Shown here in pieces: positions 790 through 57,000 of a stretch of 64,000 bases of DNA. Under the pieces are notes generated by a model that worked only from the letters and a program-made list of their open reading frames with translations, was not told the origin of the DNA and made no database searches. Positions within the stretch are counted from its first letter, which is position 1; each line of letters begins with the position of its first letter. Source of the stretch: Botryllus schlosseri (taxonomy: Eukaryota); NCBI GenBank assembly GCA_051294905.1, contig CM119374.1, positions 21,700,001 through 21,764,000 on the forward strand, read 5' to 3'. Both the position numbers and the translations under genes were made by a program.

Positions 790-1410
790 CATAACCTATG
801 TTCCACGCGCTATAGGAACTTGATCTTAGCGGAAGTCAATATACTACTTATGAATACGCAATGACGTGAGGTAAAACGATTGTGTTTCCCAATTAAATTT
901 TACCACTCCGTTTCTATTGCGTAGGTATGATGAAGACGGATTGCTCGAATATTAAACGATAAAACCGGTGCTGTTGTCGTAAAATATTTGTTGTTTAAGC
1001 CGAGTTGCAACTGCTGCATTGTCCATCTCCGCACGCGCCACTGATCGGTCGTCAAACCTGTGATTTGTCGGAAGGCAACCGGCATAATAAATACAATTGT
1101 ATGGTATATTCTAACATCACGATGTAGAACACACAAATAGTTACATGACTGTTCAGGTTGTCTGCGCATACTGCGAGTCGTTTCCAATACGGATGGATAG
1201 CAATCATAAAAGTCGCTAGCTCGTTTTGGCTGAGCTGTAACATCAATGAAAGAAAGTTCTCTGCAAATAGCTCTAACTGGTAGCAATAACCGTTAATTCG
1301 ATATCAGTCATAGAAACCCATTTTGAGATCCGCATTCTACATTAATCATGATCATAATCAGCGGTTCTCTCATTATTTCATATATTAAAAGATGCACAAT
1401 GTACAATACG
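790..1410 (+). pseudogene. Highly eroded paralogue of the array gene family
   Basis: One frame with stops gives FYHSVSI, RRIARILNDKTGAVVV (from 934) and VKPVI (1051-1065), against family FRHTCI, RRIPDKTSLAVAV and VKPVI in the same order. A hydrophobic stretch lies near 1330-1400. Confidence 0.35.
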
Positions 1411-1519
1411 ATATAATGAACCGATAGGAGAATGTCGAAACGACCAAAGACGGTAGGCTATATCAATTTACCATACAACTCCGCCTGCTGTTGTTACTAG
1501 TAGGTTTCGCTATGAATGC

Positions 1520-2292
1520 CCGATGTAACAGTGTTCTATTTGTTGATCTTTTGGCTGTCTTTCTTTTGGCCCATCCTTAGCTCTTTCTATTCTCTTCCTT
1601 GTATTCGCAATTCGCATTTCATCAGGTCGCACAGTACGTTAAATTTTTGTTGAAATCACACCTTCTCTAGCAGATTTCTCGGGTTTAGCTATATTCCACG
1701 CAATTTTGAACGATGCGCCTCTAACGGCGTCGGCAATTTTAAAAAGGCCTCGAAATATAGATTGCCGGGCTTGGCATCTAGCTATAGTAACGTTTTCTGA
1801 GATCAGGCGATATGTATGACCCCAGAAGAAACTGTTGTGGTATCATTTTAATCTTCTACGCTTTGTTACAACTGTTCTTCGATAAATATGACACATCGGA
1901 TATCCATTTAGATCGGAGAAAGCAAATTATTGTTCCATGCAGAATTACAAACCCAGTTTTCGCTGTTTAATTTCCCGTTTCTTGTTCTTCTTTCTGTTCA
2001 AACTATTCACGGTTACTGAACACTCTTTAAAAGTTTACTACGCAGCGAGATACTCTTGAACCAGAGTACAGTCGGATACCGATTCAAAACGATAACAATA
2101 ACTCGAGCATATATCAAGAAACCCGAACACATCAAAGAATGAGTAATCAAACGAAACAGAGACGGTGCGATAAGAGAGTTAAGTAGCTGAATTAATATGT
2201 AACAATACGGGGCCAGTAGTAATTGGTTTTATGATGAAAGATGTCGCGGGCCGCAAAATGTACGTCTGCGGGCCGCGGGTTGAGAACCCCTG
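1520..2292 (-). mobile_element. 5' part of a hAT element (SPIN/GTF2IRD2-like transposase remnant)
   Basis: TIR GGTTGAGAACCCCTG ends at 2292. Minus-strand reading gives FSDLNGYPMCH and GASFKIAWNIAKPEKSAREGVI, resembling the ASFxIAxxIAKxxKPFxEGE motif. The other end was not found. Confidence 0.7.
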
Positions 2293-2689
2293 TTCTATGG
2301 GTTTACATTTGGTAATGATGCCTTACGAACAGTGGTGCAGGGGAGGAGGGACGCATTCAAATTGGTACCTCTAAGTACATAATTTCCCTCTGCACGTTGC
2401 AGACCCCTGACTTACTGTACGGGCGGCAAATTAAAGGTACCGTTTGACATTTATGAACTGTCAATTCCGAAACAGTCATATTTGTTGCACAGAAGTAGGA
2501 TTTACTACCATCTTCTCCACTAGAGATAGTAGGCCTATAGGGTATGTAAGTCGTAAAATCTTGTACGGGACGGTTTTCCAGTCATTCTTGTTACGGTCTT
2601 AATATGTAAATGAGCTCGGTAGCTCATCAAAAAGAACCAAACGCAAAATGTCTTTCTGAGAGTCACTCATTTTTTCAGTTTCTCCACGA

Positions 2690-3138
2690 GAAAATGTGCG
2701 AGTACTATATAAGACGTACAGGGAAGCGTGACCAACACTATAATACACGCCATGGCGGAAAACGAACGGAGATATATTTCCAAAGGCGAATTTACAGACT
2801 TTGTTGAGAGAATACGAGACGAGGACCGCATACGCGTTGCCGTGTTGGCAATGTCGTACGCTGTGTTCGTGTGCAGCATATCCGTCGCAAAGCTGCGAAC
2901 CAGTATTGGTGTATTGATTTATAATTTCATGTTCCTGAAATGCTCGAAAGACATTATAAAGTCTTTGATAAGTTCGCTGTCGTTTTTTTTTATATCGGAG
3001 TCTCTCTATTTACAAAATGACATTGTGCCGAAATGTCGATATATTTTGTTTAACTTCTTATTTAAGATTTTAACAGCTGTATTCAATTCCTCCATTGTGC
3101 TATGCCTTTTATCGCAAATCACTGTGAATATGTTTTAA
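2690..3138 (+). pseudogene. C-terminal half of an array paralogue; the NC motif is missing
   Basis: VTNTIIHAM..RRYISKGEFTDFVERIRDEDRIRVAV aligns to VTTMVLKAM..WEYTSKSDFLNFVEKVREEDRQRVAA and is followed by a hydrophobic tail. Upstream ENVRVLYKT (2690, other frame) resembles ENCRTIFKT. Confidence 0.7.
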
Positions 3139-3164
3139 CAGAAGATATACACCTTTTCAAAATA

Positions 3165-4429
3165 GAGTTGCATTTAAAGCAAAAATCAATTTAAAACAAG
3201 CATGTTTAAAACAAGGCCATTGTTTAAAACATGTTTTTTTTTCAATCCATGACGTCATGAATATTGAATTGTGACGTCATAGTTAATTGACATTGACAAT
3301 TGAAAATATAGGGTGAACATAGCTCCTTTGACGAAACATCTGTACTAGTAATGGTGAACATACTATTTTCAGGGTTCCGGCCATTCCATATCGATCTACG
3401 TCGGGTATAGTAATTGTCCGTAGGCTCATACAACATGTTTTGTGGAAAGTATTTACTCAATTATACCATAATTTTATAACTTAAAAAAAATGTGTTCTGG
3501 TTTAAAACGCTGTTTAAAACATGTTTTAAACCAGTGGTTCCCAACCTTTTTATCCTAATTCCCCACTTCCGATATATTCCGAGCCTTCATTCCCCACCTA
3601 AAATCTCTATATCCATATCAACCCATTAAAGTGCGGCTACCTCCAATAAAATTCTTGCAAGACTTTGCTTAGTAATTAGTACGTGCTATTGGGGATTGTT
3701 AAGATCCCCGGAATTGGTCAGTACACAATAGAATTAACGCAGCGGTGAACTGGTAACCGTAAACGCACCTCAGTAAATCTATGTATCTACCCTGACGCGC
3801 AGCCAACAGAAAAATAGGAGGGGTTTGAAAATTTTCCAATTGTTGGGGGGGTAGCACCAATTTACATGCGTAAATGCCGAATATTATCAGATAAACTTCC
3901 TGATGTTGACGAACTCATGCGTGCGGTATGTATATAAGCCGCAGTAAACTACACTTTCTCACAGTACTAAAATAACTGGAAATAACATAAATACGTAATT
4001 TCATTTGTAACGAGTCCGCATGTGCTCTCAATTAGCGAGTCCACGATCTCCCTTGAATACTTGTTTAGCAATATGAGCTCTTATTACAACGAATAGGAAT
4101 TTTTCTATCACTACGTTTCGTGACCGATGATGGTGTACAAATGAATGAAAACATTTCTAGAGATCGCGTGTCGCTATCCAGGCGATTTTTGCTTAATTGG
4201 AGGCAATGATAATATGAATCGCTGAATTGCAAATGAGCTATGAAATATTGGGTCGGCATTTCAACACGATATTTAATAAAGGAGAATGCTACTGTAAATA
4301 TTTTTTCAAACGTGAGTCTATTCTCCACCAGAAATCCCGAAATTCCCACCAGTGGGGAATTCTCCACCGTTTGGGAACCACTGTTTTAAAAAAAGTGTTT
4401 TGAAACACCGTTTGTTTCAAATGCAACCC
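3165..4429. mobile_element. MITE with G(G/A)GTTGCATTT termini and TA flanks, interrupted by a nested hAT element
   Basis: Starts ta-GAGTTGCATTT and ends AAATGCAACCC-ta. The body aligns with the uninterrupted copy at 36911-37271. Confidence 0.8.
3532..4383. mobile_element. Non-autonomous hAT element
   Basis: TIRs CAGTGGTTCCCAA / TTGGGAACCACTG, with flanks TTTTAAAC / TTTTAAAA (7 of 8 match). Confidence 0.85.
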
Positions 4430-6291: not shown

Positions 6292-7200
6292 ATGAACAAG
6301 GTATACAGTAGCCAACACTCCAATCGCATAGATTTGGTTTTTATAATACAGTATTGTAATTGATTTGCGAATGGTATGCGGAACGGTTTCATTTTCAAGT
6401 TTCGCAAGTAAAATTCCCCCGTGTCGACCATGGATCTGTGAAGGATTAACAATACCGGCATGTACTTGAAAATTAAACTACCCGTGGTACCGACACTGCA
6501 AAAACACACGCCTCGGTTGATTCCAAGAAATAGTGCATGGTTATCTACCAACCACATTGTTTTAGGTCTTAAAACGAATTCTTTAACCTTGCGAATGAAA
6601 AAAGCTAAGAGAAAGGCACTCGGCGTAGGCAAGTGAGCAATGCACCTTCGGGGTTGCTGTTGCTGTTTGTTTTTCATGATGTTTTTCGACTACAATGATC
6701 ATTTTACACCAGGCCAATATATTTATTATGATTCCACATTTGCCGACTATTAGCTCTGCCCCTTTCTAGGCTTTTTATAAGACACCGCTTGCGCGGATCA
6801 CGTGGCGAGGAGGAGCCTAGATAAACCTCCAACACTGAGGTAGGAGTTCTGGAGTCTACCTCGTAGTGTTCATCGTTGATGCATTGCCAAATAACTCGAA
6901 TCGTACCATGCCGCGGCATAAATGAAACCTTTTCTTTGATTATTAAAAATCGATCGCGGTATGTATGGACGAGAGATTTTTCGTTACAGGAAACAAAATA
7001 ATAGGTATTGTCGGATTCCTGTCATTCCAAGACATCAAAACCGCGGTAATTGTGATGACGATAATAAAAATCATGTTTTGCAGACAATTTACCGTAATTT
7101 CGTCAAAGAAAACTTCGCACCAACAGTGTAGGGGGAAATATAGCGGAGAAACATGCGGGTCCAATTGATCTGCGACTTGCCTACGATTAGGACCGTGCGA
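6292..7200 (+). pseudogene. Eroded divergent paralogue split by a SINE
   Basis: NGFIFKFRK*NSP (from 6382) resembles TFAFTIRKENGEP. HIVLGLKTNSLTL resembles VVLGMECNSKTRSLTI of the 48.6 kb copy. A hydrophobic segment IIGIVGFLSFQDIKTAVIVMTIIKIMF follows the SINE. Confidence 0.45.
6653..6863 (-). mobile_element. tRNA-derived SINE family A, 5'-truncated
   Basis: Aligns with 26726-27001 (GGCGAGGAGGAGCCTAGATAAACCTCCAACACT) and carries a (CAGCAA)-like tail. Confidence 0.8.
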
Positions 7201-8993: not shown

Positions 8994-9188
8994 CAATGAT
9001 CCCTCTAATTTTTGACGAGTCTGCGCACACTCACCAACTCACTCCGCAGACGCTTGAAAAACAGTGCGAAACGACTAAAAAAAATGGCATTACAACAAAT
9101 TTTTTTCTGCGCAACTTTGATTTTCTGTGCGCAGAGACCGACTCAGCTCTGCGCATTTGCGCACGTGCGCAGCTTAGAGAGAACATTG
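8994..9188. mobile_element. MITE with CAATG(A/T)TC...GAACATTG termini and TGCGCA repeats
   Basis: A second copy lies at 39986-40170. GTCACG occurs in both flanks. Confidence 0.75.
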
Positions 9189-11080: not shown

Positions 11081-11089
11081 TCCCAAATC

Positions 11090-13990: not shown

Positions 13991-15421
13991 GGGTGTCTTA
14001 ATTTTGTACATTGAAGCTAATGAAAAGCTGCTATAGCTAATTAAACAAGAAAGCATATGAAACGCTAATGAAGCTAATGAAAAGCTAATGAAACGATTGA
14101 AACAAGCTAATGAAAAAAGGAAACTAATGAAAAGCTAATGAAAAAGGAAGCTAATGAAAAGCTAATTAGGCTAATGAAACAAGTTAATGAAACAAGCTAA
14201 TGAAATGCTAATGAAGCTAATGAAGGAAGGAACATAATGAAACAAGCTAACGAAACTTCAGATATTGTGCACAATTTCCAACTTTGACTATGATCAATTA
14301 TATTTGGAACCACAACATATCGATAAACTTCGCTGATTGCGATTGCGACGCGTTTGTTGATTGGCGCTGAATTGGTATCTTTGAAATAAGAGCCGACGTC
14401 AATGCCATTCAAGTTTATGGATGAACTATGCTTCCAGCAACTTTCAGCCATCCTTTTCGGTTGGCCATATTATTGAAAATACTCGTGATACTCGAAATAA
14501 TTGTATCTAAAGGAAACGATCAATAATCTAAATTATAATCCGTCGGTCTTGATGTGAAGTTTATTTGTAAAATCATAATTACTGTCATGCCCGCAACCAA
14601 TATCCACGCGAATTCGGTTTACTAGACATATCACGTGCCGAGAAGGGTTGATCCAGTTTTGTAAGATGCGTTGATGAATTTGCACACATAACCATCCACA
14701 TTTTTAGGCGTGCTTTCACTTTTGCTGAAATTTCGGCTTGTAGCATAGCATTATGTTACTGGCGAAGAATCCAAAACTACATTCTCCACTCTCCAAAATT
14801 CGAATTGAGGAAAGTAAGCAGTTCTCTGTTTAGAAGTTACCGCATAGTACAAGAAGGCAAAGCATACTTGAGTGCACCGAATAGGTAGGAGAGCTTCGTC
14901 AGAGATCACTTCTGTATGTCTGTCGGTGCCGCCAAATCTTCCGGTAGTTTGCAGGATGCAGTTAGCGAAAAAAGGTCGCAAACCGCTGTGATAGGGTGTC
15001 GCGGACTATGTTTCATTTACAGAGGGTGCCGCGAGGTTGACAATTTTGACAACCACTGGTCTATCCGGATATGAATTGGCACCATTGCAATCATGATTCA
15101 AAAATCCCTATTTGAAATCGAATATCCAGATAATGGACTTACAATAAAACTCAAATCTGAATAATAAAACATATTATAAATCTAAATTTGATAACATTCT
15201 GAACGTGGATGTAACATTTTGGATTTAATAAATTCAGAATTATATGAGCAAAATCCCAATCTGGACTTATCTAATCCAATACCACATAAGCTCCCTTGTT
15301 TCATTAGCTTGTTTAATTAGCTATAAATTTTCATTGGCTTCATTTTTGCATTAGCTGGTTTCATTAGATTTTCATTAGCTTACTTGTTTTATTAGCTTCA
15401 ATGTACAAAATAAGGACACCC
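13991..15421. mobile_element. Non-autonomous MULE/foldback-type element
   Basis: Perfect 9-bp TSD CCATTGGAA (13982-13990, 15422-15430). Termini GGGTGTC / GACACCC, with long inverted ends made of GCTAATGAAA tandem units. Confidence 0.85.
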
Positions 15422-15819: not shown

Positions 15820-16979
15820 CCTACTGCAGATGACTTTATAGCCGTGGTTCCCAAATTCTTTTTGGCTCGTGGTACACTAGAAAAATTATAAAAAGATCAT
15901 CACGCCATATCAACTTATTTCTTTTATTCAATTGTTTCTGATTCACAATGAGCAAACAATGGGTCATCTACAACCGTAAGACTATAAAGTAGTCTACAAG
16001 GTGTAAAATGTCAAGTGGTAAGTTTACCGATAGTACAACAATACCAACGAAATGTAGTTTGCCACAAATATTTGATTTAGAAATCAATTTGAACAATTTT
16101 CGACCTAACACTACAATTTTGACAAAATTTTGACTTTTTTTGCAATGTCAAAAATAATTGCCCTACTGATGAGTTGTCCTATTTTTCTATCGCGGGTTTC
16201 TGTTGTTACTATTGCTCTATCGGTGGTCACGGGTCAATTTGGTCATCTTTGTCGCAGTTGCACCTTGCGCTACCCAATTCACAAGCATATAGTTCAGTTC
16301 AATGGTCAAATCGAACAATTTCGACGAGATTCTGTGGTGTTCGAAGGAAATGGTATTCGATATGTATTGAAAATGTCACAAGGCAGCTATTTCCGATATG
16401 TCACGTGGAAAATTTAATTCCCACTATGACGTGTAGACATATTATAGCATCTATTGCTGTACGATTGTAAGGCTGACGTATACGAGGAAAATTAGAAATA
16501 TTGGGACAGTGAGAATAATATTTCACAATGCATTTGAATCCAAATGTATTGCGCATGGATCGCGTTATCATTACGTTATATACTGTAGATATGTTTATTT
16601 TAGATAATTTATTTCGGAATGGGTTTAGCTAATAGTATCGTCTTTGGTGGTTCGGCTTATAGTCATCACTAGATATTGCTCTCTCGTTAATTCGCGACGC
16701 CACAGAGCAACTTCGAATGGAGAAACATCACATGAGTAATTTCGCAGTCTCACACCGTACGTTATTTTTGAAACGTACCGACCTGCATGCCCTAACGCGT
16801 GACTACTATGTATCATACATAGCCTACGTAGATTTGTTGATTGCTGCTAGGAATAAAATTTCAGGAAATACATGTGCATGTATTATATATGTAGGCATGG
16901 ACACTAGGGATGTCAGTTTACTGAACAGAAAACATAGGTAGAATATACAAAATGGAAAATAGTTCTTTTACTACATATA

Positions 16980-17639
16980 TTGGTAACGGTCAACAACCTA
17001 CTTTTATGGTCATCCCCACAATCTGATACCTACGACGATATCGTGAAACACTTGATGAAATCGACAACGTTCAGTTTCACAGTTCGCAAAGAAGCACTCG
17101 AGCCTTTCCGACACACCAGCGTCGAGCTACAATTCGATGGAGAGCCACGCTTTAAGGTAAACCGGTGGATTCCCGACAAAACGCCGTTTGTATCCGCAGT
17201 GTTCGGAGCACCCGCGGTCACGTACGCCGAATAAATCAAAGCAGCTCCGGCTTCCAATTGCGGACAAACATTCTGAAGGGCTAACAAAGACAAATCGAAG
17301 AGAGTGACTAAGAACTTGCTCGATGACCTAGAAGTGGAATATAAGCAGTGGGACACGAATTGCCGCGACCACGTCACAAAGGCTGTGTTGAAAGCCATGC
17401 AAGGATGGCAATATACCTCAAAACAAGAATGTCTAGACTTCATCAGGAGGGCGCGTACGGATGACGGCAGAATCGTGTCTTCTATGGCCATAATTTATGC
17501 ACTGATCATTTTTAATTTATCGACAAGCGCCATTTTTCTCAATATTAGCGTTTTGACATTTAGTCTGATATTCAGCCGCACCTGTCGCGCCATGGCCGCC
17601 AAATTAGTCACCTTGTCACCAAACACGCAAATATTTTGA
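16980..17639 (+). pseudogene. Full-length array paralogue with two in-frame stops
   Basis: ORFs 16980-17234 and 17304-17639 are in one frame, broken by TAA at 17232 and TGA at 17274. It retains FRHTSVEL and YKQWDTNCRDHVT but has no ATG at the expected start. Confidence 0.9.
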
Positions 17640-29718: not shown

Positions 29719-29744
29719 GCACGCGAGAAAAAGGGACAGCAAGT

Positions 29745-29753
29745 ATATAAAGC
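29745..29753 (+). promoter_or_regulatory. TATA box
   Basis: TATATAAAG 76 bp before the ATG, with similar spacing in three other copies. Confidence 0.7.
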
Positions 29754-29820: not shown

Positions 29821-30537
29821 ATGTTTGATAAACTTCACAGATGGAATGCTCCGGCTTCTCAAACCTACTCGGATGTCATCAATTCGTTAGAAGATGCAAC
29901 TACGTTTAGCTTCACTGTCCGTAAAGAGCAGCGAGAGCCTTTCAGGCATACTTGCATCGAACTGCAATTCGACAATGAAGCCTGCTACACCGTAAATCGA
30001 CGGATACCCGACAAAACCTCATTGGCAGTGGCGGTGCTCGGAGCCCGTGCCGTTACTTACATCGAAAGGGCAAAGAGTGTTACGTCTGAAAACTGTAGGA
30101 CAATATTCAAAACTCAAAATAAATCAGAATCAGAAGCGGTCATAAAAGAATTACTGCAAGACGCAGAAGAAGTATACAACTTGTGGGATAAAAATTGCCG
30201 AGACCACGTCACAACCATGGTGCTAAAAGCAATGAAAGACAGAACATGGGAATATACGTCGAAATCTGACTTTTTAAATTTCGTTGAAAAAGTTCGAGAA
30301 GAAGACCGCCAGCGAGTCGCGGCTATTTTTATTTTCTACGCTTTTTCTATTTTACAAATATCATCAGCAATTTTTATTTTCAACGCCGCCATGGCCTTAA
30401 TATTATTTAAATACGATAAATATTCGAGAAGCATAATGACGTTGTTGGTGCTTTCGATAACGCCGGTAAATGCGTTTAATGCCGGTGCTAAAATGGGTTA
30501 CTTTCGCCAACTGCGAGCTGTCTCTTCTATATTTTGA
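29821..30537 (+). CDS. Intronless 238-aa permuted papain-like (LRAT/PPPDE/DUF778-like) protein with a C-terminal membrane segment
   Basis: Intact ORF with H43 in FRHTCIE and C126 in YNLWDKNCRDHV. Hydrophobic residues at about 166-196 and 205-221. It has a TATA box, an AATAAA and several paralogues. Confidence 0.9.
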   Translation: MFDKLHRWNAPASQTYSDVINSLEDATTFSFTVRKEQREPFRHTCIELQFDNEACYTVNRRIPDKTSLAVAVLGARAVTYIERAKSVTSENCRTIFKTQNKSESEAVIKELLQDAEEVYNLWDKNCRDHVTTMVLKAMKDRTWEYTSKSDFLNFVEKVREEDRQRVAAIFIFYAFSILQISSAIFIFNAAMALILFKYDKYSRSIMTLLVLSITPVNAFNAGAKMGYFRQLRAVSSIF

Positions 30538-37925: not shown

Positions 37926-37933
37926 TATAAAAG
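37926..37933 (+). promoter_or_regulatory. TATA box
   Basis: TATAAAAG 82 bp before ATG 38008. Confidence 0.6.
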
Positions 37934-38007: not shown

Positions 38008-38587
38008 ATGTTTCGCGAACTTCATCGACGGAACTCTGCCAAGTCGCGAAGTTATTTCGATATTATATCAACGTTAGATGAGTCGATGACCTTTGCGTTC
38101 ACAATCCGCAAAGAAAATGGCGAACCAATTCGACACACGTCAATAGAAATGCAATTCGACGGTAAAGCGCGATACACGGTAGATCTACGCATTGCATCCC
38201 GCACCGTCACTTACATCGAAAACGCTAACGAAGTGAGGTCGGAGAACTGCGGAATTGTGTTCCAGAGCACTAACAAAGTCGAATCGAAAGCAGTAATCGA
38301 CAAACTGCTTGGGGGGGACGGAGAAATGTTATACAATTCGTCTGGCAATATCAGCAAAGACCGCGTCGCCACGACAGTGGCAATCGCGATGGAAGGCAGA
38401 CCCTGGAAATGGACTTCTAAGCAAAAGGTTTTGGAATTTATTGAGAGTGCCCACACGGAAAATAGTAGAAGAGCGGGACTGGTTGTAATAGCTTGCATTG
38501 CATAGCGCGCATTTCGTAATTCTTTTCATCGATATTGCATTTGTTTTGGGTGCTTTCTCAGGTGTACTCATGACGGATTGCGTATAA
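38008..38587 (+). pseudogene. Divergent paralogue lacking the NC cysteine, with a frameshift before the membrane tail
   Basis: MFRELHRRNSAKS...EPIRHTSIEMQFD. The PDKTSLAVAVLG block is deleted and LYNSSGNISKDRV replaces YNLWDKNCRDHV. There is a stop at 38503-38505, and the hydrophobic tail ALHSAHFVILFIDIAFVLGAF lies in a shifted frame. Confidence 0.8.
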
Positions 38588-43035: not shown

Positions 43036-43044
43036 TATATAAAG
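43036..43044 (+). promoter_or_regulatory. TATA box
   Basis: TATATAAAG 72 bp before ATG 43108. Confidence 0.65.
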
Positions 43045-43107: not shown

Positions 43108-43843
43108 ATGCTCATTAATATTCACAGATGGAACGCTCCTAAATCAGAAACTCAGGCAGACATCCTGAAGAACCTTGAGGAGTCCGCTGTGTTCAGTTTC
43201 ACAGTTACGGGAGCCTTTTCGGCACACCTGCATCGAACTTCAGTTTGATCACAGAGCGCATTTCACCATCAGCAGGAGAATTCCCGATAAAACCTTCCTG
43301 CCTATCGCCATCTTGGGAACACGTGCAGTCACTTATATCGAGAGAGTGATGGATGTCAAGTCCGAAAATTGCGGAACCATATTTCAGAGCCAAGACAAGC
43401 AAGAGTCCAGAGCGATGCTCGAAAAATTGCTTCGCGATTTCGAGGCAACCTACAATTTATGGAATAAAAATCGCAGAGAGCACGTGACAACCACGGTGCT
43501 GAACGCAATGGAGGGAAAGGTGTGGGAGTTTACCTCCAAAAGACAGTTTCTCGACTTTGTTGAGTACGTACGTGTCGAAGATCGCAGAAGAGTAACGGCA
43601 ATCTTGATATTATATTTCAGCGTGGTCAACCACCTGGCCTCAAGTATTTCATTAATTTTCCTATTTGCAATAAGTCTTTTATTAACTTTTCATAAGGCCA
43701 GTAGACACATAGTGACGTTGCTAGCCTCGTCAGTTATCTCGTTTGCTACTATCAAAACTTGCGCAAAAATTTGCGTCCTACTGAAATTCCGCGATTTCGT
43801 ATTTAATTTTAATATGTTTCATTCACTGTTAATTTATATGTAG
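43108..43843 (+). pseudogene. Array paralogue with an 11-nt frameshifting deletion and Cys to Arg in the NC motif
   Basis: MLINIHRWNAPKSET...FSFTV, then cgcaaagagca is missing relative to the 54586 gene. YNLWNKNRREHV replaces NCRDHV. Confidence 0.9.
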
Positions 43844-44970
43844 GTCCTTAATTTAATTATGCGCGACGAATGTACTGTTGTTTTTATAATATTTCAGCAC
43901 TGCGAATTTGAAATAAACGGGTAGATATTTAGTAAACGAAATTATTGGTTCAAACGACTAACCGAGCTGGATATCAATTTGCAGCATGCAAGTTCTCGGT
44001 TAATAAAGTTCTAGGGCAAAGGAGGGTTTCCTTTCTCAAGATGACAGAAATAGATTTTTACTTTTGGAGTTAGTTATTATTATTATAAAAATCAGTATTT
44101 GTGCTTTAAAAGGTAATAGTCATATAGCGGCACCTATACCATATCCAGTGTTCCACAGTCTTCAATTTGATACGTCACCTATACATCTTGGAAACTATAG
44201 TTACAGCATAGGTAATTGTTACAGGGCACTATATAGCATGAAATTGCAAACTCGGCAACCGGCGTTAGTATTTCAGTCAAAACTAAGACATTGTATGTGA
44301 TGAATTCAACTATAACATTAGGACACAATTCTATCAAGAAAGAACTTGAAAAATCATATTATGAACAATCAGCGGAGAATTGTGAGAATAAGGCAGAGCA
44401 GGTTATCTTGTTTCTATAACCACCTCAAAAAGTGGAACATGTAAACGGAAGCAACCTCTCCAAATATGAACAATTTGAACATGCACATGAGCATTTTTTA
44501 TGGGTGACTCGTTTATATCAACTGGCATGGGTGTGAAAGTCAAACTACGTATATCAAAACTTGTGATACTGCTTTGATACATGCAGCACATATAGCATGG
44601 TGAAAATCTGGAAAATCCAAATTGTTCCGAGAAAAGAATATCACTCTGAGTTAAGCCCCTAACTGGGAATATTCTGGACAATCTAGACATTTCTGACATC
44701 GCGAATCATCGTGATGACTAGGTGCATTCGAATCTGCGTGCATTAATATTTCTTTATTTAATTTATAGAACATTCGTCATTTCCGATACTAAGATCGTGA
44801 CAACTAAACCATAATATTGGTACATCTCCATTACATATATCGTCAGTCCCTCAACGGTGAAATAATCCGAGCATGGGTTGACTGGAAGATAACCCTGTCT
44901 ATTTCAGAACCACACGACTAAGTCGAGGCTTGGGAGCAAGTAAGAAAAATGTATCACTAGTGATGGTCAC

Positions 44971-46557
44971 TAGGGTTGTCCATAATTTGGAAAATCTCAA
45001 AATTTATGCGTATCCATGTCTCATTCTATAGATTATAGTTAAGAATCGTCAATGAACCTGCAATAAGCTCACAGGATAGTCGTTAACATTTGTCTAAATG
45101 CGTTTGAAAGTAGCTGCCGTAGAGTGGGCGTGTCAGCGACCATAGAACGGCAAGTAGACTAGTAATCACGAAATCACGGCGTTTGATTGGCTAATCTGCT
45201 ATGCTTCAATGATCACGACGTTGGCGGCTTGATGATCAGCTGGTCAAGGAGTCGGCTGACGGCGGTGATTCTGTAAGCGCATTATAGGTTGGTCCGCAAC
45301 TAATGATTTGGGATTAATTCAGAACATATTGAGTTACGAAATAAATGATGAACTAAGAACAGCTGCTTCACAATATCTTTAAATGCATGACTGGATGGCT
45401 TATTGTGAAGGTAGCCGTTGCAGCCTGTATGCCTAGCACAAAATCATGCGGAAAAATAGTGCAAAGGCGCTTATGCAAGTGGTAAACGAATTTCTAGTTT
45501 CAGAGGGGATGTACCATCATAGAATACAAATATAAAGCTTGTCATTGAAAGTACTTTGTCTGATCTTATTAGGCTGTTGTCGTGGTACGTAATTGAAGTC
45601 TTGAATGCTGTAAGGGCAGGATGAATCAGTCATTTATGCTTGGCACTTGTCAGATTCTTGCAGCATAATGAATCATACCAGCAAAGTCATCAATGATGCC
45701 AGGCAAAGAGGTCTAAAGATAAGCACAGACTATGCTGGTAGGACCAGTAAAAAGACAGTTTGCTTACATTGCTTAGCATGTCCTTAATGAATGTTAGGTC
45801 ATTACCGGCTGCATAACGACTAATGCTTGGATCAAACCAGACATGGACATAAAAAGGATGGATTGAAGCGGTGTGGTGGTTACACTCTTCTTCAGAAATC
45901 CAATTTAAGCTACCTGGTCGGCCCACATATCTTCTGAGCATACAGGATTGTGTCCAGCATCCATCTCACATGTTATATATGCTGCACCAGTTTGGTGATG
46001 TCTAATATGCCATACCTGCACCCAGAAAAGCAGGACCACTTGGCGTAATCTCAAGCATATCATATATAGGTATTTCTTGGATCTATACTTAGTTCTCTAA
46101 GTTCACAATCAGTCGCTGTTTCACCTCTGTCATGCCTGTAAGAGGCTATTGTTGCTCTAAACCTATCGTTCCTAGTTTTAACACTAAAACATTCAATGAC
46201 CAGATGTCTCATTTTAATAATAAATCACCTGTGTACGATGCGCTTGCAGAATCATTGCCGTTAGCGATCTCCTTGGACTAATAGAAGCACATAATCAGCA
46301 AGCCGCTGTGGTCGTGATCATTCAAGCATAGCTGGAAAACCAATCAAGAGACGTGATTTCGATTACTAGTCATCTCGCCGTTCTATGGTCGCTAACACGC
46401 CCACTCTACGGCAGCTACTTTCAAACGCATTTAGACAAATGTTAACGACTTTCCTATGAGCTTATTGCAGGTTCATTGACGTTTTTTACCAATAATCTAC
46501 AGAATGAGACATGGATACGCATATTTTTTGAGATTTTCCAAATTATGGACAACCCTA
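44971..46557. mobile_element. Non-autonomous element with approximately 270-bp TIRs and an 8-bp TSD (hAT-like termini)
   Basis: Perfect TSD ATGGTCAC and TAGGGTTGTCC / GGACAACCCTA termini. 44971-45240 is the reverse complement of about 46310-46557. Confidence 0.9.
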
Positions 46558-46898
46558 ATGGTCACGGTCTGCTTACTCATTTACGTCTCCCTTAAACTTC
46601 GCAGTAAAACGTAACATTGTAACAGCGAACAAGGGCTGTGAGTCAAAAACGTGAATACGTATGATACTTGACTGTTTACAGGTCGTTTGTGTAATTGCTA
46701 CGTTACAAATCTCACGGTGCTGTGATTTCATAAAACCACTGCGGGGTGTTTCTCATATCTGCCGGTCTGTGGTCTGTCACGAAGTTGAGATTTGAGGCAA
46801 TTAGATTAACACATCGAAGACATGTCAAAGCTTCTACAAGTGGAGATAGAAATATTAGATCTCACAAGTCCTCAAGTAAGTAGTGAGTAAGTATGTTT

Positions 46899-50389: not shown

Positions 50390-50745
50390 ATGATAATATA
50401 CAAAACAGAAGGTAAATTGAAATATAACCGTGGCAATTAAAAAGCTCAGCTGTATCATATAAATTTCCATCTAAATAAATTTACGTCGACATATCTAATT
50501 GTACATATTATTTATAACGATAGGCCAAAATAAAATCATGTACGACTATCACCAAAACACGGATTGTTCATAGGCCTGCTGGTAATCCAATTTGATGCAT
50601 GTACTGCAATGCCACCAAACTTCCAGCATATGTTTTCCTTGGAACGTAACTTGGAAAGAAGTTACGTAAATATACCTTTTCCATCATTTTCAAAGAACTG
50701 AGTTTAGCTTTCAATACAACATCCATTGTAAAAGAATATTTATTG

Positions 50746-50782
50746 AGCTCGAAGACTTTTCGGGTGCCTCTTTGCAAGAGTT
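50746..50782 (-). ncRNA. Minimal hammerhead ribozyme motif, degenerate copy
   Basis: The minus strand reads AACTC-TTGCAAA-GAGGCACCC-GAAA-AGTCTTC-GAGCT, with A6 changed to C relative to the plus-strand copy. Confidence 0.45.
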
Positions 50783-52026
50783 AACGGCACACTAAAGGGA
50801 TTTAAACAGATCTAAAAGCAAAAACCAAAAAAGCAAAGTATGACGCAACAATCAAAATCACAGACCATCACTAGGGTATTGAAAAAAATCGGATATAGCT
50901 CCCAAATATGGCCCAGAAAAACGCCCGGCATTCTTACACCTACCTTGGCTAGGTAACGTGTCTAACCGTTTTGAAAAACTTATTAAATCGGCTGCTCACC
51001 GTTGTTATTTCAGCGTTAACACGCATGTGGTGTACACGACGAAACCCTTGTTGCCTAACTCTCGAAAAGATGTACTTCCTGCTTTTAATGCAAGTAATGT
51101 TGTCTACCAATACAAGTGCCACTGTGATAGTAGGTATGTAGGACGTACATCTCAAAGATTGTTTGAGCGTATTAAGCAGCACATCCCCCAAATTGATTCG
51201 GTCAAAAACTTGCGCAAATGATCGCACGGAGCTCGCACGTCAGCGCAAATTGGCTGCTAAAACAGACTGCTATGACGATTACCAAGCATATGTTTCGTCA
51301 ATTGGTCAGGACCTGAGTGAAAACTCCGCCGGTGCACAGCACTATAATGACAATATGTTCACTGCCATTGCGCGTGGCAGATCTTTGTTTCATTTAAAAG
51401 TGCTGGAGACTACTTTTATTCAGTTGAACAAACTTATTTTATGTAGACAAAAAGATTTCCTCTATAACATACAAATTTCTCAATAGTGCGTGTTGTTTCG
51501 TGCGTGTAACTGTTTATTTACAAATTGCGTCGCTACTATAGTACCGTATGTCCGTCTAATTTCAGTGTGTTATTGTTGCCATTGATACAATGCAAATTTC
51601 ATGGTCTGTGATTTTGATTGTTGGGACATACTTTGCCTTTTTGGTTTTTGCTTTTAGATCTGTTTCAATCCCTTTAGTGCAGTGGTCGGGAACCTTTTTT
51701 TGGCCGAAGAGCCATATTGGCCCTATTTTTTTTCATCTCAACTCCCAAAGAGCCATACATGCAAATCAACTGTTACGTCACAATTGAAAATTCGTGACGT
51801 AATGGTAGCACTAATTCGAACTCACTACATGGGATTCCTCGTGTGCGCCACATTTCCTCTGTAAAAACTGGTATTTATTGTTCGAATATAAAGCTTGAAA
51901 CGAGAGGTAAGACGCAGACGGGCCAAGGCTCCACCAAGGATAACGCAATTCCCTGTATAAGTAGTTTAGAATTTATTATAACTGATATTAAGCGAATGTG
52001 ACTGTCACACTGATTCCAAAAATCCA

Positions 52027-52695
52027 AGGGCGGAGATAATAAAGTCAGCTGATTTGGGAGAATGCTAATCATGTGATTAAAAACTGCTAATCGGGACGCA
52101 TCTCAGGCGGAGATAATAAAGTTAGCTGATCCGGAATATTGCTAATCGTGTGATTAAACACTGCTAATTGCGACTCATCAAGTTGGAAAGGTTACCCCCG
52201 ATGGTTAGTCGAGGTGTCCCGAGTTTTAAATCAAGTGGCGTTATCTGTTGCATCATAATGCGAAAACGCGTTAAAGGCCATCAGTTGTCAATTTGTTGAA
52301 TGAAACAGCAGCCTGTTGATAGCGAAACTGCCACAGTAATATGTCGAAATATCATCATCGCAAAATGAAGGTCGTGTCCAATGCGTTCGGTACAACTAAG
52401 AAATGGATTATAGAATATTAGGTATAGCTCTGCAATGGCGGGTACATAATTAGTGAAGCTATTACCTAGGAGACCATCGGCACGGTCATTATTAGAAATA
52501 TTCGTGCCTAGGAATGGTACCCAGTTTTTATAGATAACAAGTTATCTATAGTTTGTTCTGGTTTGATAAATCAAGAGATCTACACTAACTTTATGCGCTG
52601 CGATCAACCGGTTTCCTTAATCCTGGTTTGATAAATCCTGACGAACGCGATAATCGACTTTTATGGCTAATCCAACTTTTTTTTATCTCCGCCCT
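52027..52695. mobile_element. Nested TIR element with an internal tandem duplication of about 77-bp period
   Basis: AGGGCGGAGATAA / TTATCTCCGCCCT termini. Units start at 52029 and 52106. Confidence 0.6.
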
Positions 52696-53010
52696 ATATA
52701 CATACCGACTTCCCCATTCTCAAAGTATTCGGCGGTAACATAATGTTGCGCTACACGCATAAATTTCATGCTACACAGAACGTGGAGAAAACGGATCGTG
52801 GATAGCTATGGCGTTGTTTGTAATTCGAGTTTGTAATTGGGAGTGTCACATCCACAACAGTTCGTTTCGTGCCGTAGATCAGGAAGACAATGTGTATTTG
52901 AAAACTGCGTTTTGAAATGGGCGGCGCCATATCTGCTGTGCTCTTCGAGTCAACGTATCGCACAATTCATGATTTCGATTCGGATACACCGCCAGGAGGT
53001 TTGAGTCAGT

Positions 53011-53050
53011 AGTCATTTCGATGCCGTGGGTTCGAATCCCATCGATGCCA
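53011..53050 (+). pseudogene. 3' half of a tRNA-Leu-like sequence
   Basis: AGTCATTTCGATGCCGTGGGTTCGAATCCCATCGATGCCA resembles the variable arm, T arm and acceptor 3' strand of metazoan tRNA-Leu. No D arm or A-box lies upstream. Confidence 0.6.
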
Positions 53051-53565
53051 CCACGCCACGATACAGAGCCTGTACTCCCTGTTGCATCACGAAACGATGT
53101 CGCCACACGATAAACGTTTAATACATAAGAGAAATCTTAACATTACAAGTAATGGTTATGTCAGTCAACTAAATAAACGGCACAATCAGAGAACTAATCC
53201 TTAGCGTGCCAATTAACAGGTGCCGAAATTCGGCTCCATTCTATTACAAACAAAACTGGCGCATGGAATTTGCGAGTGATATTTTGGCCGCTGGCGTGAC
53301 AGTAACCTAAAATTGATGATTTTGAAGAGAGGGGGTCCAAGCCCCTAAACCCGAAGACGGCATTGTCTTTACCTCTCGAAGACATGCTTATACTGCCACG
53401 AGAATAGTTATTTTAGCCGTGATGAAAATATGCCAACAAGTCGCTGCGATATTGATCAATTCAGTACAAAAATAAATATTTGGCAAAGAGCCATATCTTA
53501 TACCCAAAAGAGCCATATATGGCTCGCGGGCCATAGGTTCCCGACCACTGCTTTGGTCTGACGTT

Positions 53566-53602
53566 AACTCTTGAAAAGAGGCACCTGAAAAGTCTTCGAG
53601 TT
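53566..53602 (+). ncRNA. Minimal hammerhead ribozyme motif (U3-A8 core variant)
   Basis: Helix I AACTC/GAGTT, core TTGAAAA...GAAA, near-palindromic helix III AAGTCTT, and predicted cleavage after C53597. Helix II is weak. Confidence 0.6.
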
Positions 53603-54507
53603 CAATAAATATATACTTTTACAATAGATGTTGTATTGAAAGCTATATGCAAGTTCTGTACCACGAACCAGCTATTTAAGAACAGAGTTTGCAATACTCG
53701 GTAAATCTCTAAACATAACGAATATTGTTTTCCAACCACATATCTCAAGAAACTACGCTTCAGGATATATTTCCAGAAAGATTTGTGATTTTACGCTTTC
53801 GCGGCAGTAGCGGTATTATGAACTCCCAATTTGGATATTTGATCGTGAAATTAATACCGTGTCCTGGCAATGACATCTTACTATCTGTTAATAAATGTTT
53901 CAGTGATGAGTATTGGTGATAACTTGGCTCCAAATCATTGCGGCATCCTACTACCGTTATTTTAAGTTACGATATAGCCCTCATTTTAAGCAAATGTATA
54001 TAGATAGAGTGTGAACGATACGTCCCATTTGCGATCGATGGGAAAGCTTCGAAAAATAAATATTATACTGGAGTAACCGTGCGATTTCGGAGGGTGTGAT
54101 GTGGATAATGGCTACCATGCTAAGATATAGATTAGCATCTTGTCACATCGCCACAGCAACAATCTTATGTAAAAGAGCATCACACGGAATTGATGTCAAT
54201 ACGAGATAAGGTCGTACGGGAGTGTAGCGGAGCTATGTTAGTTGCGGGGCATTTGTATGATAATCGCGCGACTTGTGAACATGATGTAGTATGATACGTT
54301 TGTAGCGGACTTACACATGGGACAATACAATTGTCGGTTTCTAACGGGTCATTGATACTGTTCGATTGATAGCGTAAACAGACACGCTAAATATAGGATA
54401 TATATATTACGAGAAATACCTCAAAGAACACGCTACCAGATCAGCCGAGTTACAATCTCCTCGAACGAGAGTGTGAAACATGATATCAAAAAGAAAAAGT
54501 CTGCAGA

Positions 54508-54515
54508 TATATAAG
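54508..54515 (+). promoter_or_regulatory. TATA box
   Basis: TATATAAG 78 bp before ATG 54586. Confidence 0.65.
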
Positions 54516-54585
54516 CAATGCGAATGCAGCATGATTGGAGCACTGACGCTAATATCACCGGATTGATTGAACTGAACTAAAGAAC

Positions 54586-55302
54586 ATGTTGGGTAATATT
54601 CATAGATGGAACGCGCCACAATCGCAAACGTATGCCGACATCTTAAAATCCCTCGAAGAATCGGCTATCTTCAGTTTTACAGTTCGCAAAGAGCAACGCG
54701 AGCCATTTCGGCACACCTGCATCGAGCTTCGTTTCGACCATAGAGCACGATTCACCATTAACCGACGAATTCCAGACAAAACCTCTCTGCCCGCCGCAGT
54801 GTTAGGGGCTCGCGCTGTCACGTATATCGAAAATGTGAAGCCGGTCATATCTGAAAATTGCGGCACCCTGTTCCAGAGCAGAAACAATGACGAGTCCAAA
54901 GCAATCATTGGGAAATTGCTTTGCGACACCGAAGATACCTATAACTTATGGGATAAAAATTGCAGAGATCACGTTACTACAATCGTTTTGAAAGCGATGG
55001 AAGGGGAAGTCTGGGAATTCATTTCCAAGCAACAATTTCTGAGCTTCGTTGAAGGTGTGCGTGTAGAAGACCGCAAAAGAGTGACGGCCATATTCGTATT
55101 CTATTTTAGTGCACTTTTGCACCTGTCAATCAGTGTTTCCGTAGTCTTCCTGTTTGCAATAACTATTTTATTGACTCTTCATAAGACTGCTAGAGACATC
55201 GCAATACTACTGGTGTCGTCAGTAGTCTCGCTTAGCATGATCAAATCTTGCGTGGAAATTTGCGTGCCTGTGAAAATTCGTCATCTCATCTTAAAGTATT
55301 GA
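54586..55302 (+). CDS. Second intact intronless 238-aa permuted papain-like protein with a membrane tail
   Basis: Intact ORF collinear with 29821-30537 (H43, C126), with AATAAA at 55378. Confidence 0.9.
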   Translation: MLGNIHRWNAPQSQTYADILKSLEESAIFSFTVRKEQREPFRHTCIELRFDHRARFTINRRIPDKTSLPAAVLGARAVTYIENVKPVISENCGTLFQSRNNDESKAIIGKLLCDTEDTYNLWDKNCRDHVTTIVLKAMEGEVWEFISKQQFLSFVEGVRVEDRKRVTAIFVFYFSALLHLSISVSVVFLFAITILLTLHKTARDIAILLVSSVVSLSMIKSCVEICVPVKIRHLILKY

Positions 55303-56351
55303 TTTATTGAATTCATTCATGTGCAATAATTTAAACAATCATTCGTTTTTATTCATATTCTATCACTGTCTTTTTGAAATAAACCGGAAATTATTTATTG
55401 AAACCATCTTTGTTCAATGTGCGGAGGAGAAGAATGCTATATTGAGTCGAAGTATGAGATGGAATGGTCACTCGGGGCATGCTATCGTGGTCTCCGGGAT
55501 CCTATTATCTGCCGAGAAAGAGAATTTTTCACTTGATTGGTGATAATCGATAGATTCTGGCCTTTACAATGCTTCGATTCTTGTGTGCACAACGTGGTCA
55601 AGGAGATAATGTTTTAAATTCATACGTAGATCATTCAGACATCTTTCATGCAGGCATGGTATATCGAGTGAAAGTGGTGATTGTTCCTCACGTGAATGCT
55701 CTCCACCGCGGTTATCAAGTATGTCAATATAATGCAGAGTATAATGTAGTGTACAAAGTACATATCTACAGGCTGTCAATGAGGACATTATTTGTACACA
55801 GATTCAGAATATATACATAGTATTTAGATTAATTCCATCGCAACTTTAACAGGATTACCTATTATGCCCATACTTATTTGGAGCATTCTTACAACTCATT
55901 CACAATGAGATTTGCCATTCAACGGTTTGGGCCATCCAGTCAAGTACATTATCAAGACCGGCCGTACTTTCTGTAGCATTCACGTAAGTTCCTATGAAAT
56001 GGTCATCCATCATATATAGGCCTACTTTCAATTGAGATAGACAGGAAATGTTTGCGGAATTACGGCGGATAAGATGCGTATCCAACTGCATTGTTTCGGG
56101 AATTTGGAAGCGATTGAGTTGTGAAGGAATCGCAAGGTTATTGTTTCAGTACTACCAAATGTTTTTGTTATGACTGACTGTGTCGGATCAACAATAGTGG
56201 GAAAGTCACGGACACCATAGTTTCACCTTGAGCCGCCGTCAGAGTGACTCGGACGAGGATTGTATGCAGGACCTGGCGATCTAGCGATTGACGATCTAAC
56301 ACTATGCAATCCTGTCGTTTTCACACGATTGCACGTGGCAAATTAGCGACA

Positions 56352-57000
56352 ATGTTTCTCACAAAGGATTCTTATAAACTCTAACTATACCTCGATTTCT
56401 TGTGATAAATACGCCCCTAAAGTGTTCGGTTTCGCGTCTGATCCTGTGTTATTCAATAGTTGTTTATTTATTGTTGGTCTTCATAGCTCCGATTGCCATG
56501 CTAATTTATCACACAACCCCCCCTTCAATTTGGATCACTTGAAGTTGTCGATTCTGTGTTCCGTTTATGGGATATTTCCCCACCTCATCGCAGATCATGT
56601 TTCCAAAATTTTCTCTTCTCTACCGGTTTGGGTATTGATGCTAATCCACCGACACGCGTCCTTACGACACAGGATTCTCTCCTTTATGACTGGAGAAACG
56701 TATTCCGACGTTTCTAAATTAAGTAATAATGTTATTACAATAAACATCATGATGGGAGTCCGCAAAGCGACACTTCACAATTTCAAAACCGAAACTCGGG
56801 ATGTTTCTTCTTGCGTCAGTATTAAACCGGGCACATTCCGCGGCTAACGTTCAAAATCCCCGTTACCGCCGGATTTCCAGATTGACAAACGATATTTCAT
56901 TTACGTTAGATATGTCTCTGCTTGTTTTTGTGTATTAAGGACATGCAAAGACGCATTTCAATTACTGTTGTTACATGACTCGTGTAGGGGTTAGTAAAAT
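56352..57000 (+). pseudogene. Divergent-subfamily paralogue, disabled
   Basis: SSDCHA is shared with the 48.6 kb copy through synonymous codon changes. ETYSDVSKLSNNVITINIMMG against DTYNLWDKNCRDHVTTIVLKAMEG, and FCVLRTCKDAF against FMFLKCSKDII. Confidence 0.6.

What the first reader, a model, noticed from the sequence alone, without database searches (positions are those of the whole stretch)
790..57000. Window-wide tandem array of an unnamed intronless, membrane-anchored permuted papain-like enzyme family
Seen: six clear same-strand copies (2.7, 17.0, 29.8, 38.0, 43.1, 54.6 kb), two of them intact, plus many eroded ones. Known: His in an HxxI strand followed about 80 aa later by Y-x4-NC is the catalytic order of permuted NlpC/P60 folds (LRAT/PLAAT acyltransferases and phospholipases, PPPDE/DeSI isopeptidases, DUF778/TMEM222). 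NCRDHV is closest to the NCHSHV of DUF778. Inference: this is a lineage-specific birth-and-death expansion of a kind typical for immune, defence or recognition genes. I do not recognise the family.
Basis: partly seen in the sequence, partly recalled or inferred. Interest (0 to 1): 0.85.

Follow-up and report, generated by a model that had tools for sequence, protein, structure and literature searches.

The report
Sea-squirt array of membrane-anchored Cys-His enzymes
This sea-squirt DNA carries six tandem copies (two intact) of an unnamed, intron-free gene family whose protein is predicted to be a membrane-anchored enzyme related to known lipid- and protein-trimming cysteine enzymes; it is a new branch of a known enzyme superfamily, not a new kind of system.

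Summary
The observation largely holds. Six plus-strand copies lie at 2.7, 17.0, 29.8, 38.0, 43.1 and 54.6 kb.
- c30 and c55 are intact 238-aa ORFs.
- c38 is an open 165-aa frame lacking the NC motif and the hydrophobic tail.
- c17 has two stops and no ATG.
- c43 has one frameshift and Cys->Arg.
- c2.7 is a C-terminal fragment.
- No further eroded copies were detected.

Copies share no flanks or termini, so they are not transposon cargo. Each full-length copy has a TATA box 72-93 nt upstream. Duplications are old: dS is saturated, omega is about 0.1-0.2, and two copies have orthologs in another species. This is slow birth-and-death, and nothing tested supports an immune role.

The most likely function is acyl (lipid or thioester) hydrolysis or transfer at the cytosolic membrane face; this is inferred, not shown. 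An earlier scan note reports six more copies just upstream.

The parts
2728..3138 (+). Copy c2.7: 5'-truncated fragment covering only the region after the NC motif plus the hydrophobic tail
   Evidence: HMM positions 137-241, E 6.3e-15. tblastn 2713-2982. No N-terminal half in any frame upstream.
16989..17639 (+). Copy c17: pseudogene. No ATG; in-frame stops at 17232-17234 (TAA) and 17274-17276 (TGA). The RH and NCR codons are still present.
29821..30537 (+). Copy c30: intact 238-aa gene. His43 codon 29947-29949, Cys126 codon 30196-30198. Hydrophobic tail from residue 166.
   Evidence: (E 3e-102)
38008..38505 (+). Copy c38: open 165-aa frame. His is retained (38134-38136), the NC motif is replaced (NISKD, 38347-38361), there is an internal loop deletion, and there is no hydrophobic tail. 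Candidate catalytically dead soluble paralogue.
   Evidence: (E 4e-52). Pairs with the Cys-less P0008 from another species (100/100) at 70% identity with only in-frame gaps. Under a neutral substitutions-only model both frames stay open about 6% of the time.
43108..43843 (+). Copy c43: recent pseudogene. One frameshift near 43206-43208 and Cys126->Arg (CGC at 43472-43474); otherwise full length.
   Evidence: omega 0.14 against c55. Its partner P0001 in another species keeps the NC motif.
54586..55302 (+). Copy c55: intact 238-aa gene. His43 codon 54712-54714, Asn125-Cys126 codons 54958-54963. Two hydrophobic segments at about 166-198 and 204-226.
   Evidence: (E 2e-104). Structure models.
16884..16889 (+). 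TATA box 93 nt (measured to the profile-match start, 16977) upstream of c17
29744..29751 (+). TATA box 77 nt upstream of the c30 ATG, in a CAGCAAGTATATAAAGCA context shared with c43 and c55
37926..37931 (+). TATA box 82 nt upstream of the c38 ATG
43036..43043 (+). TATA box 72 nt upstream of the c43 ATG
54508..54513 (+). TATA box 78 nt upstream of the c55 ATG. A poly(A) signal lies 76 nt after the stop.

Best explanation
The window holds part of a tandem array of a tunicate-restricted, previously unnamed gene family. Each gene is a single-exon coding unit with its own TATA-box promoter. It encodes a protein of about 238 aa with two parts. The first is an N-terminal domain of about 165 aa with the circularly permuted papain-like (NlpC/P60, 'H-box/NC') fold. 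The second is a C-terminal hydrophobic hairpin that anchors it to a membrane, with the catalytic domain facing the cytosol.

By analogy with PLAAT/LRAT, PPPDE and CLN5, His43 would deprotonate Cys126, which sits at the N-terminus of a helix. Cys126 would attack an acyl ester, thioester or amide to form a covalent acyl-enzyme, which is then resolved by water or an acceptor. The most likely substrates are membrane lipid acyl chains or S-acylated proteins.

The array arose by old tandem duplications followed by slow birth-and-death. Two canonical genes survive here, three copies are dead, and one lineage (c38) lost the nucleophile and the anchor but has kept an open frame in two species.

Shown here: copy number and state, fold, conserved dyad, hydrophobic tail, absence of shared flanks, age and constraint. 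Inferred: catalysis, substrate class, topology, expression.
For: Copies and their state.

Fold:
- The domain model has pLDDT 87.3 and pTM 0.84.
- AFDB cluster hits at probability 1.0 are named LRAT, PPPDE, YaeF/YiiX and DUF4105.
- Atlas shape hits are DUF4105/Lnb_N and TseH-like.

Dyad:
- P40, R42, H43 and E82 are invariant in all 20 sequences.
- N125, C126, R127 and D162 are also invariant once the Cys-less P0008 is left out.
- The Cys lies at the start of helix 126-137 and the His at the start of a strand.
- All PLAAT rows begin at model 22 = chain 9, which puts H43 on His23. The row ends put C126 within 0-2 residues of Cys113 (PLAAT3 triad from PMC4624172 and PMC8316810).
- Sub-threshold Pfam hits of distant members to Peptidase_C97, RTE1, LRAT and TseH fall on the YNLxxNNCRxHV segment.

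Anchor: Kyte-Doolittle 2.0-2.6 over residues 166-209, a basic EDRRRV cluster before it, and no N-terminal hydrophobic segment.

Own promoters: TATAWA lies 72-93 nt upstream in 5 of 5 full-length copies (chance about 0.028 per copy) and at -82 in the related species' gene.

Age and constraint:
- dS is saturated and omega is 0.11-0.23.
- c43 pairs with P0001 and c38 with P0008, both partners from the same foreign sample.
- A related ascidian contig carries two same-strand members 8 kb apart.

Lipid or thioester chemistry is typical of the characterised permuted members (PMC3142127, PMC9012467, PMC4624172, PMC10318531).
Against: - No biochemical or expression data exist. The short homolog contigs are genomic (adapter-led, no poly(A)) and give no evidence of transcription.
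- Model coordinates could not be read, so the His43-Cys126 distance and the identity of the third triad residue were not measured.
- No named family is matched above its Pfam threshold, and Foldseek E-values against the PDB are all above 0.2.
- The LRAT-type second His (His+12) is absent.
- The Tyr before the NC motif is Phe in subfamily B.
- Some fold relatives (picornavirus 2A H-box/NC proteins) have no demonstrated catalysis (PMC8316810).
- Only two of the six copies here could be active.
Confidence: 0.8

Rival explanations
1. The proteins are isopeptidases (deSUMOylase or deubiquitinase type, like DeSI/PPPDE) tethered to a membrane, acting on protein conjugates rather than on lipid acyl groups.
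Against: All C97 hits are far below threshold (18.7 bits or less, against 29.2) and cover only the Cys motif. PPPDE1 and PPPDE2 themselves show strong S-depalmitoylase activity and only weak isopeptidase activity (PMC9012467). The membrane anchor and the hydrophobic S1 pockets typical of permuted members favour lipidic substrates (PMC3142127).
Confidence: 0.12
2. The family is non-catalytic. It would be a membrane-remodelling or scaffolding protein that merely keeps the H-box/NC fold, like the picornavirus 2A H/NC proteins. Alternatively the whole array is decaying and non-functional.
Against: His43, Asn125, Cys126 and Arg127 are invariant in all 20 catalytic-type sequences across three subfamilies with only about 25% overall identity. 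omega is about 0.1-0.2 in the N-terminal domain. Intact genes are kept in several species.
Confidence: 0.08
3. The copies are cargo of a transposon, a retrogene burst or an endogenous viral element rather than host genes duplicated in place.
For: The coding sequences are intronless. The window is rich in mobile elements: a Penelope-like element at 50.7-53.7 kb, dispersed 200-bp repeats and inverted repeats. Viral H-box/NC and giant-virus LRAT/PPPDE proteins share the fold.
Against: DNA similarity between copies ends within about 10 nt of the start and stop codons. No shared flanks, terminal repeats or poly(A) tracts were found, and no inverted-repeat pair brackets a copy. All copies are on the same strand and keep a promoter TATA box at a fixed distance. 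Some copies are orthologous across species. No relative is encoded in 2.9 million viral contigs, and no viral structure matches at E<=0.001.
Confidence: 0.03
4. One reading: the array is an immune, defence or recognition gene family diversifying by rapid birth-and-death.
For: The family is lineage-restricted, and a tandem array with pseudogenes is present. Some fold relatives are antibacterial effectors, such as TseH and RHS tips.
Against: Paralogues are ancient (dS saturated) and under purifying selection, with no sign of omega above 1. Two copies have one-to-one partners in another species. There is no signal peptide, so the catalytic domain would face the cytosol rather than outside targets. 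There are no expression or induction data.
Confidence: 0.12

Closest known systems
PLAAT/HRASLS and LRAT (Pfam PF04970; H-box/NC phospholipase-acyltransferases)
   Different: No Pfam match for the window proteins; the best distant member scores 19.8 bits against a cutoff of 24.3. The motif is NCR[DH]HV rather than NCEHF. There is no second His or Asn about 12 residues after the first. Family-specific invariant residues are R42, E82, R127 and D162. The tail is longer, with two hydrophobic segments. The domain is about 40 residues larger.
CLN5 (PF15014; lysosomal Cys-based S-depalmitoylase / BMP synthase)
   Different: 12% identity and no sequence-level hit. CLN5 is a secreted/lumenal glycoprotein with extra domains and a Tyr 22 residues before the Cys. 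This family has no signal peptide, its Tyr is 7 residues before the Cys, and it has a C-terminal anchor.
PPPDE/DeSI (PF05903, MEROPS C97)
   Different: All hits are below threshold (18.7 bits or less, against 29.2). PPPDE proteins are soluble. Identity is only 8%.
DUF778 / RTE1 / TMEM222 (PF05608)
   Same: A membrane protein with a permuted papain-like domain. Three members give sub-threshold hits on the NC motif, best E 0.002. TMEM222 appears among language-model and AFDB neighbours.
   Different: Below threshold (18.7 bits against 29.4). The AFDB match is weak (rank 10, probability 0.15).
Picornavirus 2A H-box/NC and calicivirus NS1-2 proteins
   Different: They are parts of viral polyproteins. 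No relative of this family occurs in viral contigs. Identity is 11-13%.

Membership tests
Permuted papain-like NlpC/P60 superfamily (PPNE; cluster II permuted group) | Papain-like alpha+beta core in which the His-bearing strands precede the Cys-bearing helix | tested here: met
Permuted papain-like NlpC/P60 superfamily (PPNE; cluster II permuted group) | Invariant His...Cys dyad, with the Cys at the N-terminus of a helix | tested here: met
   H43 is invariant in 20 of 20 sequences. N125-C126 is invariant in all catalytic-type members. Helix 126-137 starts at the Cys.
Permuted papain-like NlpC/P60 superfamily (PPNE; cluster II permuted group) | Conserved Tyr shortly before the Cys (oxyanion / P1 carbonyl contact) | tested here: met
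   Y119 is present in the window copies and in subfamilies A and C. It is replaced by Phe in subfamily B. The feature is taken from PMC3142127 and PMC9012467.
Permuted papain-like NlpC/P60 superfamily (PPNE; cluster II permuted group) | His and Cys side chains adjacent in space, and a third polar residue orienting the His | tested here: inconclusive
   Coordinates are not readable with these tools. The evidence is indirect: the alignment register with PLAAT His23/Cys113. Invariant E82, or the near-invariant D51, are candidates for the third residue, but neither is placed.
LRAT/PLAAT (PF04970) | Pfam model matched above its gathering score | tested here: not met
   No hit for the window proteins. 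The best family member is P0015 at 19.8 bits against 24.3.
LRAT/PLAAT (PF04970) | NCEHF(V) motif and a second His/Asn about 12 residues after the catalytic His | tested here: not met
   The motif is NCR[DH]HV. Position 55 is variable. The feature is taken from PMC4624172.
LRAT/PLAAT (PF04970) | C-terminal hydrophobic membrane anchor after the catalytic domain | tested here: met
   Kyte-Doolittle 2.0-2.6 over residues 166-209.
PPPDE/DeSI (PF05903, C97) | Pfam model matched above its gathering score | tested here: not met
   Best 18.7 bits against 29.2, in 5 of 20 members, covering only the Cys segment.
DUF778/RTE1/TMEM222 (PF05608) | Pfam model matched above its gathering score | tested here: not met
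   Best 18.7 bits against 29.4, in 3 of 20 members.
CLN5 (PF15014) | Pfam match, and secretory/lumenal architecture with a signal sequence | tested here: not met
Transposon or viral cargo | Copies bounded by shared termini or flanks, or linked to mobile-element or viral genes | tested here: not met
   Similarity is confined to the CDS plus or minus about 10 nt. No bracketing repeats. No relatives in viral contigs.

The most novel reading that the evidence does not exclude
The family could be a tunicate invention: a cytosol-facing, tail-anchored Cys-His acyl-transferase/lipase system with a conserved, nucleophile-less, anchor-less paralogue (the c38 lineage) acting as a soluble regulator or decoy. 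It might be deployed in membrane or organelle remodelling, or in defence against intracellular parasites. It might descend from a horizontally acquired bacterial or viral NlpC/P60 effector, as with the tick dae genes.
Probability: 0.1. Interest if true: 0.7.

Novelty: new variant of a known kind. Interest (0 to 1): 0.42.

Why it matters
Permuted NlpC/P60 enzymes (PLAAT, LRAT, PPPDE, CLN5, TMEM222) are few, medically relevant and still poorly understood biochemically. A further family-level branch has its own invariant residues (RH...E...NCR...D), a two-segment membrane anchor and a naturally occurring Cys-less paralogue. That adds comparative material for working out what sets substrate choice in this fold. 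It also gives tunicate genome annotators a family that current domain libraries miss. The array itself is a clean example of slow birth-and-death with datable pseudogenisation. It does not open a new class of system, and the suggested immune role is unsupported.

Tried and rejected
1. Pfam on the window proteins, and phmmer or a profile against PDB sequences, gave nothing meaningful.
2. Foldseek on the full-length model was diluted by the long tail helices, so I re-folded the domain alone.
3. A permissive profile search meant to pull in true PPPDE/LRAT sequences for a profile-profile alignment returned only family members. No hhalign test against known families could therefore be run.
4. A search for extra eroded copies found none.
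5. A search for shared flanks or terminal repeats around copies found none.
6. Short homolog contigs were checked for poly(A) tails or a spliced leader as evidence of transcription. They start with a Nextera adapter remnant and are genomic, so they are uninformative.
7. DNA for the foreign partners P0001, P0008 and P0021 could not be fetched because the sample file is too large. No nucleotide-level dN/dS could be computed for c38.
8. The viral-origin idea found no viral contig relative and only weak fold-level viral hits.
9. Other long ORFs between the copies have no domain hits.
10. A literature search found no description of such a family in tunicates.
Full report
**Observation**

The window is AT-rich (about 39-40% G+C) eukaryotic DNA with few long ORFs. 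Earlier scan notes identify the genome as a sea squirt. The only named relatives of the family are 'uncharacterized' proteins of the ascidian Styela clava.

tblastn with the two intact ORFs, and a six-frame scan with a family HMM at maximum sensitivity, find exactly six copies, all on the plus strand:

| Copy | Coordinates | State |
|---|---|---|
| c2.7 | 2728-3138 | C-terminal fragment only; no N-terminal half upstream |
| c17 | 16989-17639 | No ATG; stops at 17232 and 17274 |
| c30 | 29821-30537 | Intact, 238 aa |
| c38 | 38008-38505 | Open 165-aa frame; keeps the His but reads NISKD where the others have NCRDH; has a loop deletion; ends before the hydrophobic tail |
| c43 | 43108-43843 | One frameshift near 43206; catalytic Cys codon is CGC (Arg) |
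| c55 | 54586-55302 | Intact, 238 aa |

- c30 and c55 are 63% identical. Three-frame reading gave the defects listed.
- Everything else in the HMM scan has E>0.7, lies on both strands and matches only the hydrophobic part of the profile.

**Are they mobile-element cargo?**

- blastn of each copy with 3 kb of flank on either side shows that similarity between copies stops within about 10 nt of the start and stop codons (for example 54578-55315 against 43116-43825 and 29813-30338).
- None of the 17 inverted-repeat pairs in the window brackets a copy.
- No relative exists in 2.9 million viral contigs.

**Promoters**

- All five full-length copies have a TATAWA box 72-93 nt upstream of the start. 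The plus-strand density is 1 per 780 nt, so the chance is about 0.028 per copy.
- c30, c43 and c55 share a GAGAGTKT...CAGCA-ATATATAAGC context.
- A subfamily-A gene on a contig from another ascidian has its TATA box at -82.
- Poly(A) signals follow c30, c43 and c55 within 69-101 nt.
- Each copy thus looks like an independent transcription unit. Transcription itself is untested.

**Family range**

- A word-indexed search of 5.8 billion proteins gave 7 hits.
- An exhaustive phmmer of 1.84 billion representatives gave 12 hits.
- Profile searches added three more.
- All hits are unnamed or 'uncharacterized', and none carries a Pfam domain.
- They fall into three subfamilies: A (window type, YNLWDKNCRDHV), B (F-x-IW-x2-NCRHHV, some starting MGxxxS) and C (Styela type, YNLFxNNCRxHV, single hydrophobic segment).
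- Contig L001 from another ascidian carries an A gene and a B gene on the same strand about 8 kb apart.
- Language-model neighbours include unnamed echinoderm and cnidarian clusters that I could not retrieve. 'Tunicate-restricted' is therefore what the sequence searches show, not a proven limit.

**Fold**

- Pfam and PDB sequence searches are negative for the window proteins.
- Distant members give sub-threshold hits to Peptidase_C97 (5 members), RTE1/DUF778 (3), TseH (2) and LRAT (1). These hits fall on the Y-N-L-x3-N-C-R-x-H-V segment.
- The full-length AlphaFold model (pLDDT 79.8) gave weak but thematically consistent Foldseek hits: CLN5, Cln5-like, PLAAT1/5, TMEM222, MKROS and 2A H/NC.
- The domain-only model built from a 20-sequence alignment is confident (pLDDT 87.3, pTM 0.84).
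- AFDB fold clusters (probability 1.0) named LRAT, PPPDE, YaeF/YiiX and DUF4105 agree, as do ESM Atlas shape hits and named language-model neighbours.

**Catalytic residues**

- P40, R42, H43 and E82 are invariant in all 20 sequences.
- N125, C126, R127 and D162 are invariant once the Cys-less P0008 is set aside.
- In the model the Cys opens helix 126-137 and the His opens a beta strand, as in papain-like enzymes.
- Every PLAAT alignment begins at model 22 = chain 9, which places H43 (model residue 36) on residue 23. The C-terminal ends place C126 on residue 111-113.
- PLAAT3's triad is Cys113-His23-His35 (PMC4624172, PMC8316810). That PLAAT4 shares this numbering rests on my own knowledge.
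The third triad residue is unassigned, and the LRAT-type second His is absent.

**Membrane anchor and topology**

- Residues 166-209 have 19-residue hydropathy of 2.0-2.6 and are preceded by the basic EDRRRV cluster. The N-terminus is not hydrophobic.
- This predicts a cytosolic catalytic domain held by a C-terminal hairpin or tail anchor, as in the PLAAT proteins (PMC4624172).

**Evolution**

- Synonymous sites are saturated between paralogues (dS>1.4 or not computable).
- dN in the N-terminal domain is 0.2-0.4, giving omega of 0.11-0.23. The tail evolves faster, with dN about 0.8.
- In an ML tree c43 pairs with P0001 (100/97) and c38 with P0008 (100/100). Both partners come from the same foreign sample, and c55 is sister to the c43 pair (97/98).
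- The duplications therefore predate that speciation. c43 died recently: its partner keeps the NC motif.
- The c38 lineage lost the nucleophile and the anchor before the split, yet stayed open in both species. The two are 70% identical with only in-frame gaps. A substitutions-only neutral simulation keeps both frames open about 6% of the time. This suggests a retained pseudoenzyme but does not prove it.
- The overall pattern is slow birth-and-death under purifying selection. It gives no support to an immune or recognition role.

**Mechanism proposed (inferred)**

Cys126 is activated by His43 and forms an acyl-enzyme with an ester, thioester or amide substrate at the cytosolic membrane surface. 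Lipid acyl chains or S-acylated proteins are the most likely substrates, because characterised permuted members are phospholipases or acyltransferases (PLAAT/LRAT), S-depalmitoylases or transacylases (CLN5, PPPDE) and lipid amidases (C92), and have hydrophobic S1 pockets (PMC3142127, PMC9012467, PMC10318531).

**Comparison with known families**

- The family passes the superfamily tests but fails the family tests for LRAT, C97, DUF778 and CLN5. None is matched above its Pfam threshold, and the motif, accessory residues and architecture differ.
- It is best described as a new family-level branch of a known superfamily.

**Array extent**

An unverified first-reader note (s1-258690) describes six further 'PPPDE/LRAT-like His-Cys' copies in the 51 kb ending 3.7 kb before this window. 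Another note (s1-258715) mentions a hAT insertion between the TATA-like box and the ATG of one of them. The array may therefore hold 12 or more copies over more than 110 kb. I could not read that DNA.

Noticed in passing
window 60562-64000: Near-perfect palindrome of 3.4 kb or more, centred at 62281/62282. The arms are 93-96% complementary with 0 nt between the innermost arms, and the outer arm runs into the window end. It could be a foldback element, an inverted duplication or an assembly artefact.
   Followed up: no
window 6652-6863, 26737-26950, 41800-42022: Dispersed repeat of about 200 bp (79-88% identity; the 41.8-kb copy is inverted). Possibly a SINE or MITE.
   Followed up: no
window 44968-45282 and 46238-46560: Inverted repeat of 315-325 nt (85-93% identity) enclosing about 1 kb, just downstream of c43. 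It looks like a non-autonomous element with long terminal inverted repeats.
   Followed up: no
window 3162-3531 and 36908-37276; 8994-9188 and 39986-40170: Two further dispersed repeat families (78-88% identity). One lies just after c2.7 and about 0.7 kb before c38, but the other copies do not share it.
   Followed up: partly
window 14013-14256 and 15285-15421: Minisatellite of AAGCTAATGAAA-like units, with an inverted partial copy 1.1 kb downstream.
   Followed up: no
window 50705-50868, 51601-51679, 53551-53645: Inverted terminal-type repeats (89-95% identity). They match the Penelope-like element that another reader noted at 50690-53657.
   Followed up: no
L001 4561-5262 and 12425-13240 (proteins P0006, P0010): The database proteins P0006 (298 aa) and P0010 (307 aa) are too long, because the gene caller read through in-frame stop codons (TGA at least in P0006). 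The standard-code frames end at 5262 and 13240, giving about 234 and 272 aa.
   Followed up: yes
proteins P0010, P0011 (subfamily B): The N-termini read MGQVLSG and MGLVLSG, which fits the MGxxxS N-myristoylation consensus. This would give a second membrane attachment on the cytosolic side.
   Followed up: no
L002 1-22, L003 1-20: Both Logan contigs begin with a Nextera/Tn5 mosaic-end adapter remnant (AGATGTGTATAAGAGACAG), so untrimmed adapter is present in these public assemblies.
   Followed up: no
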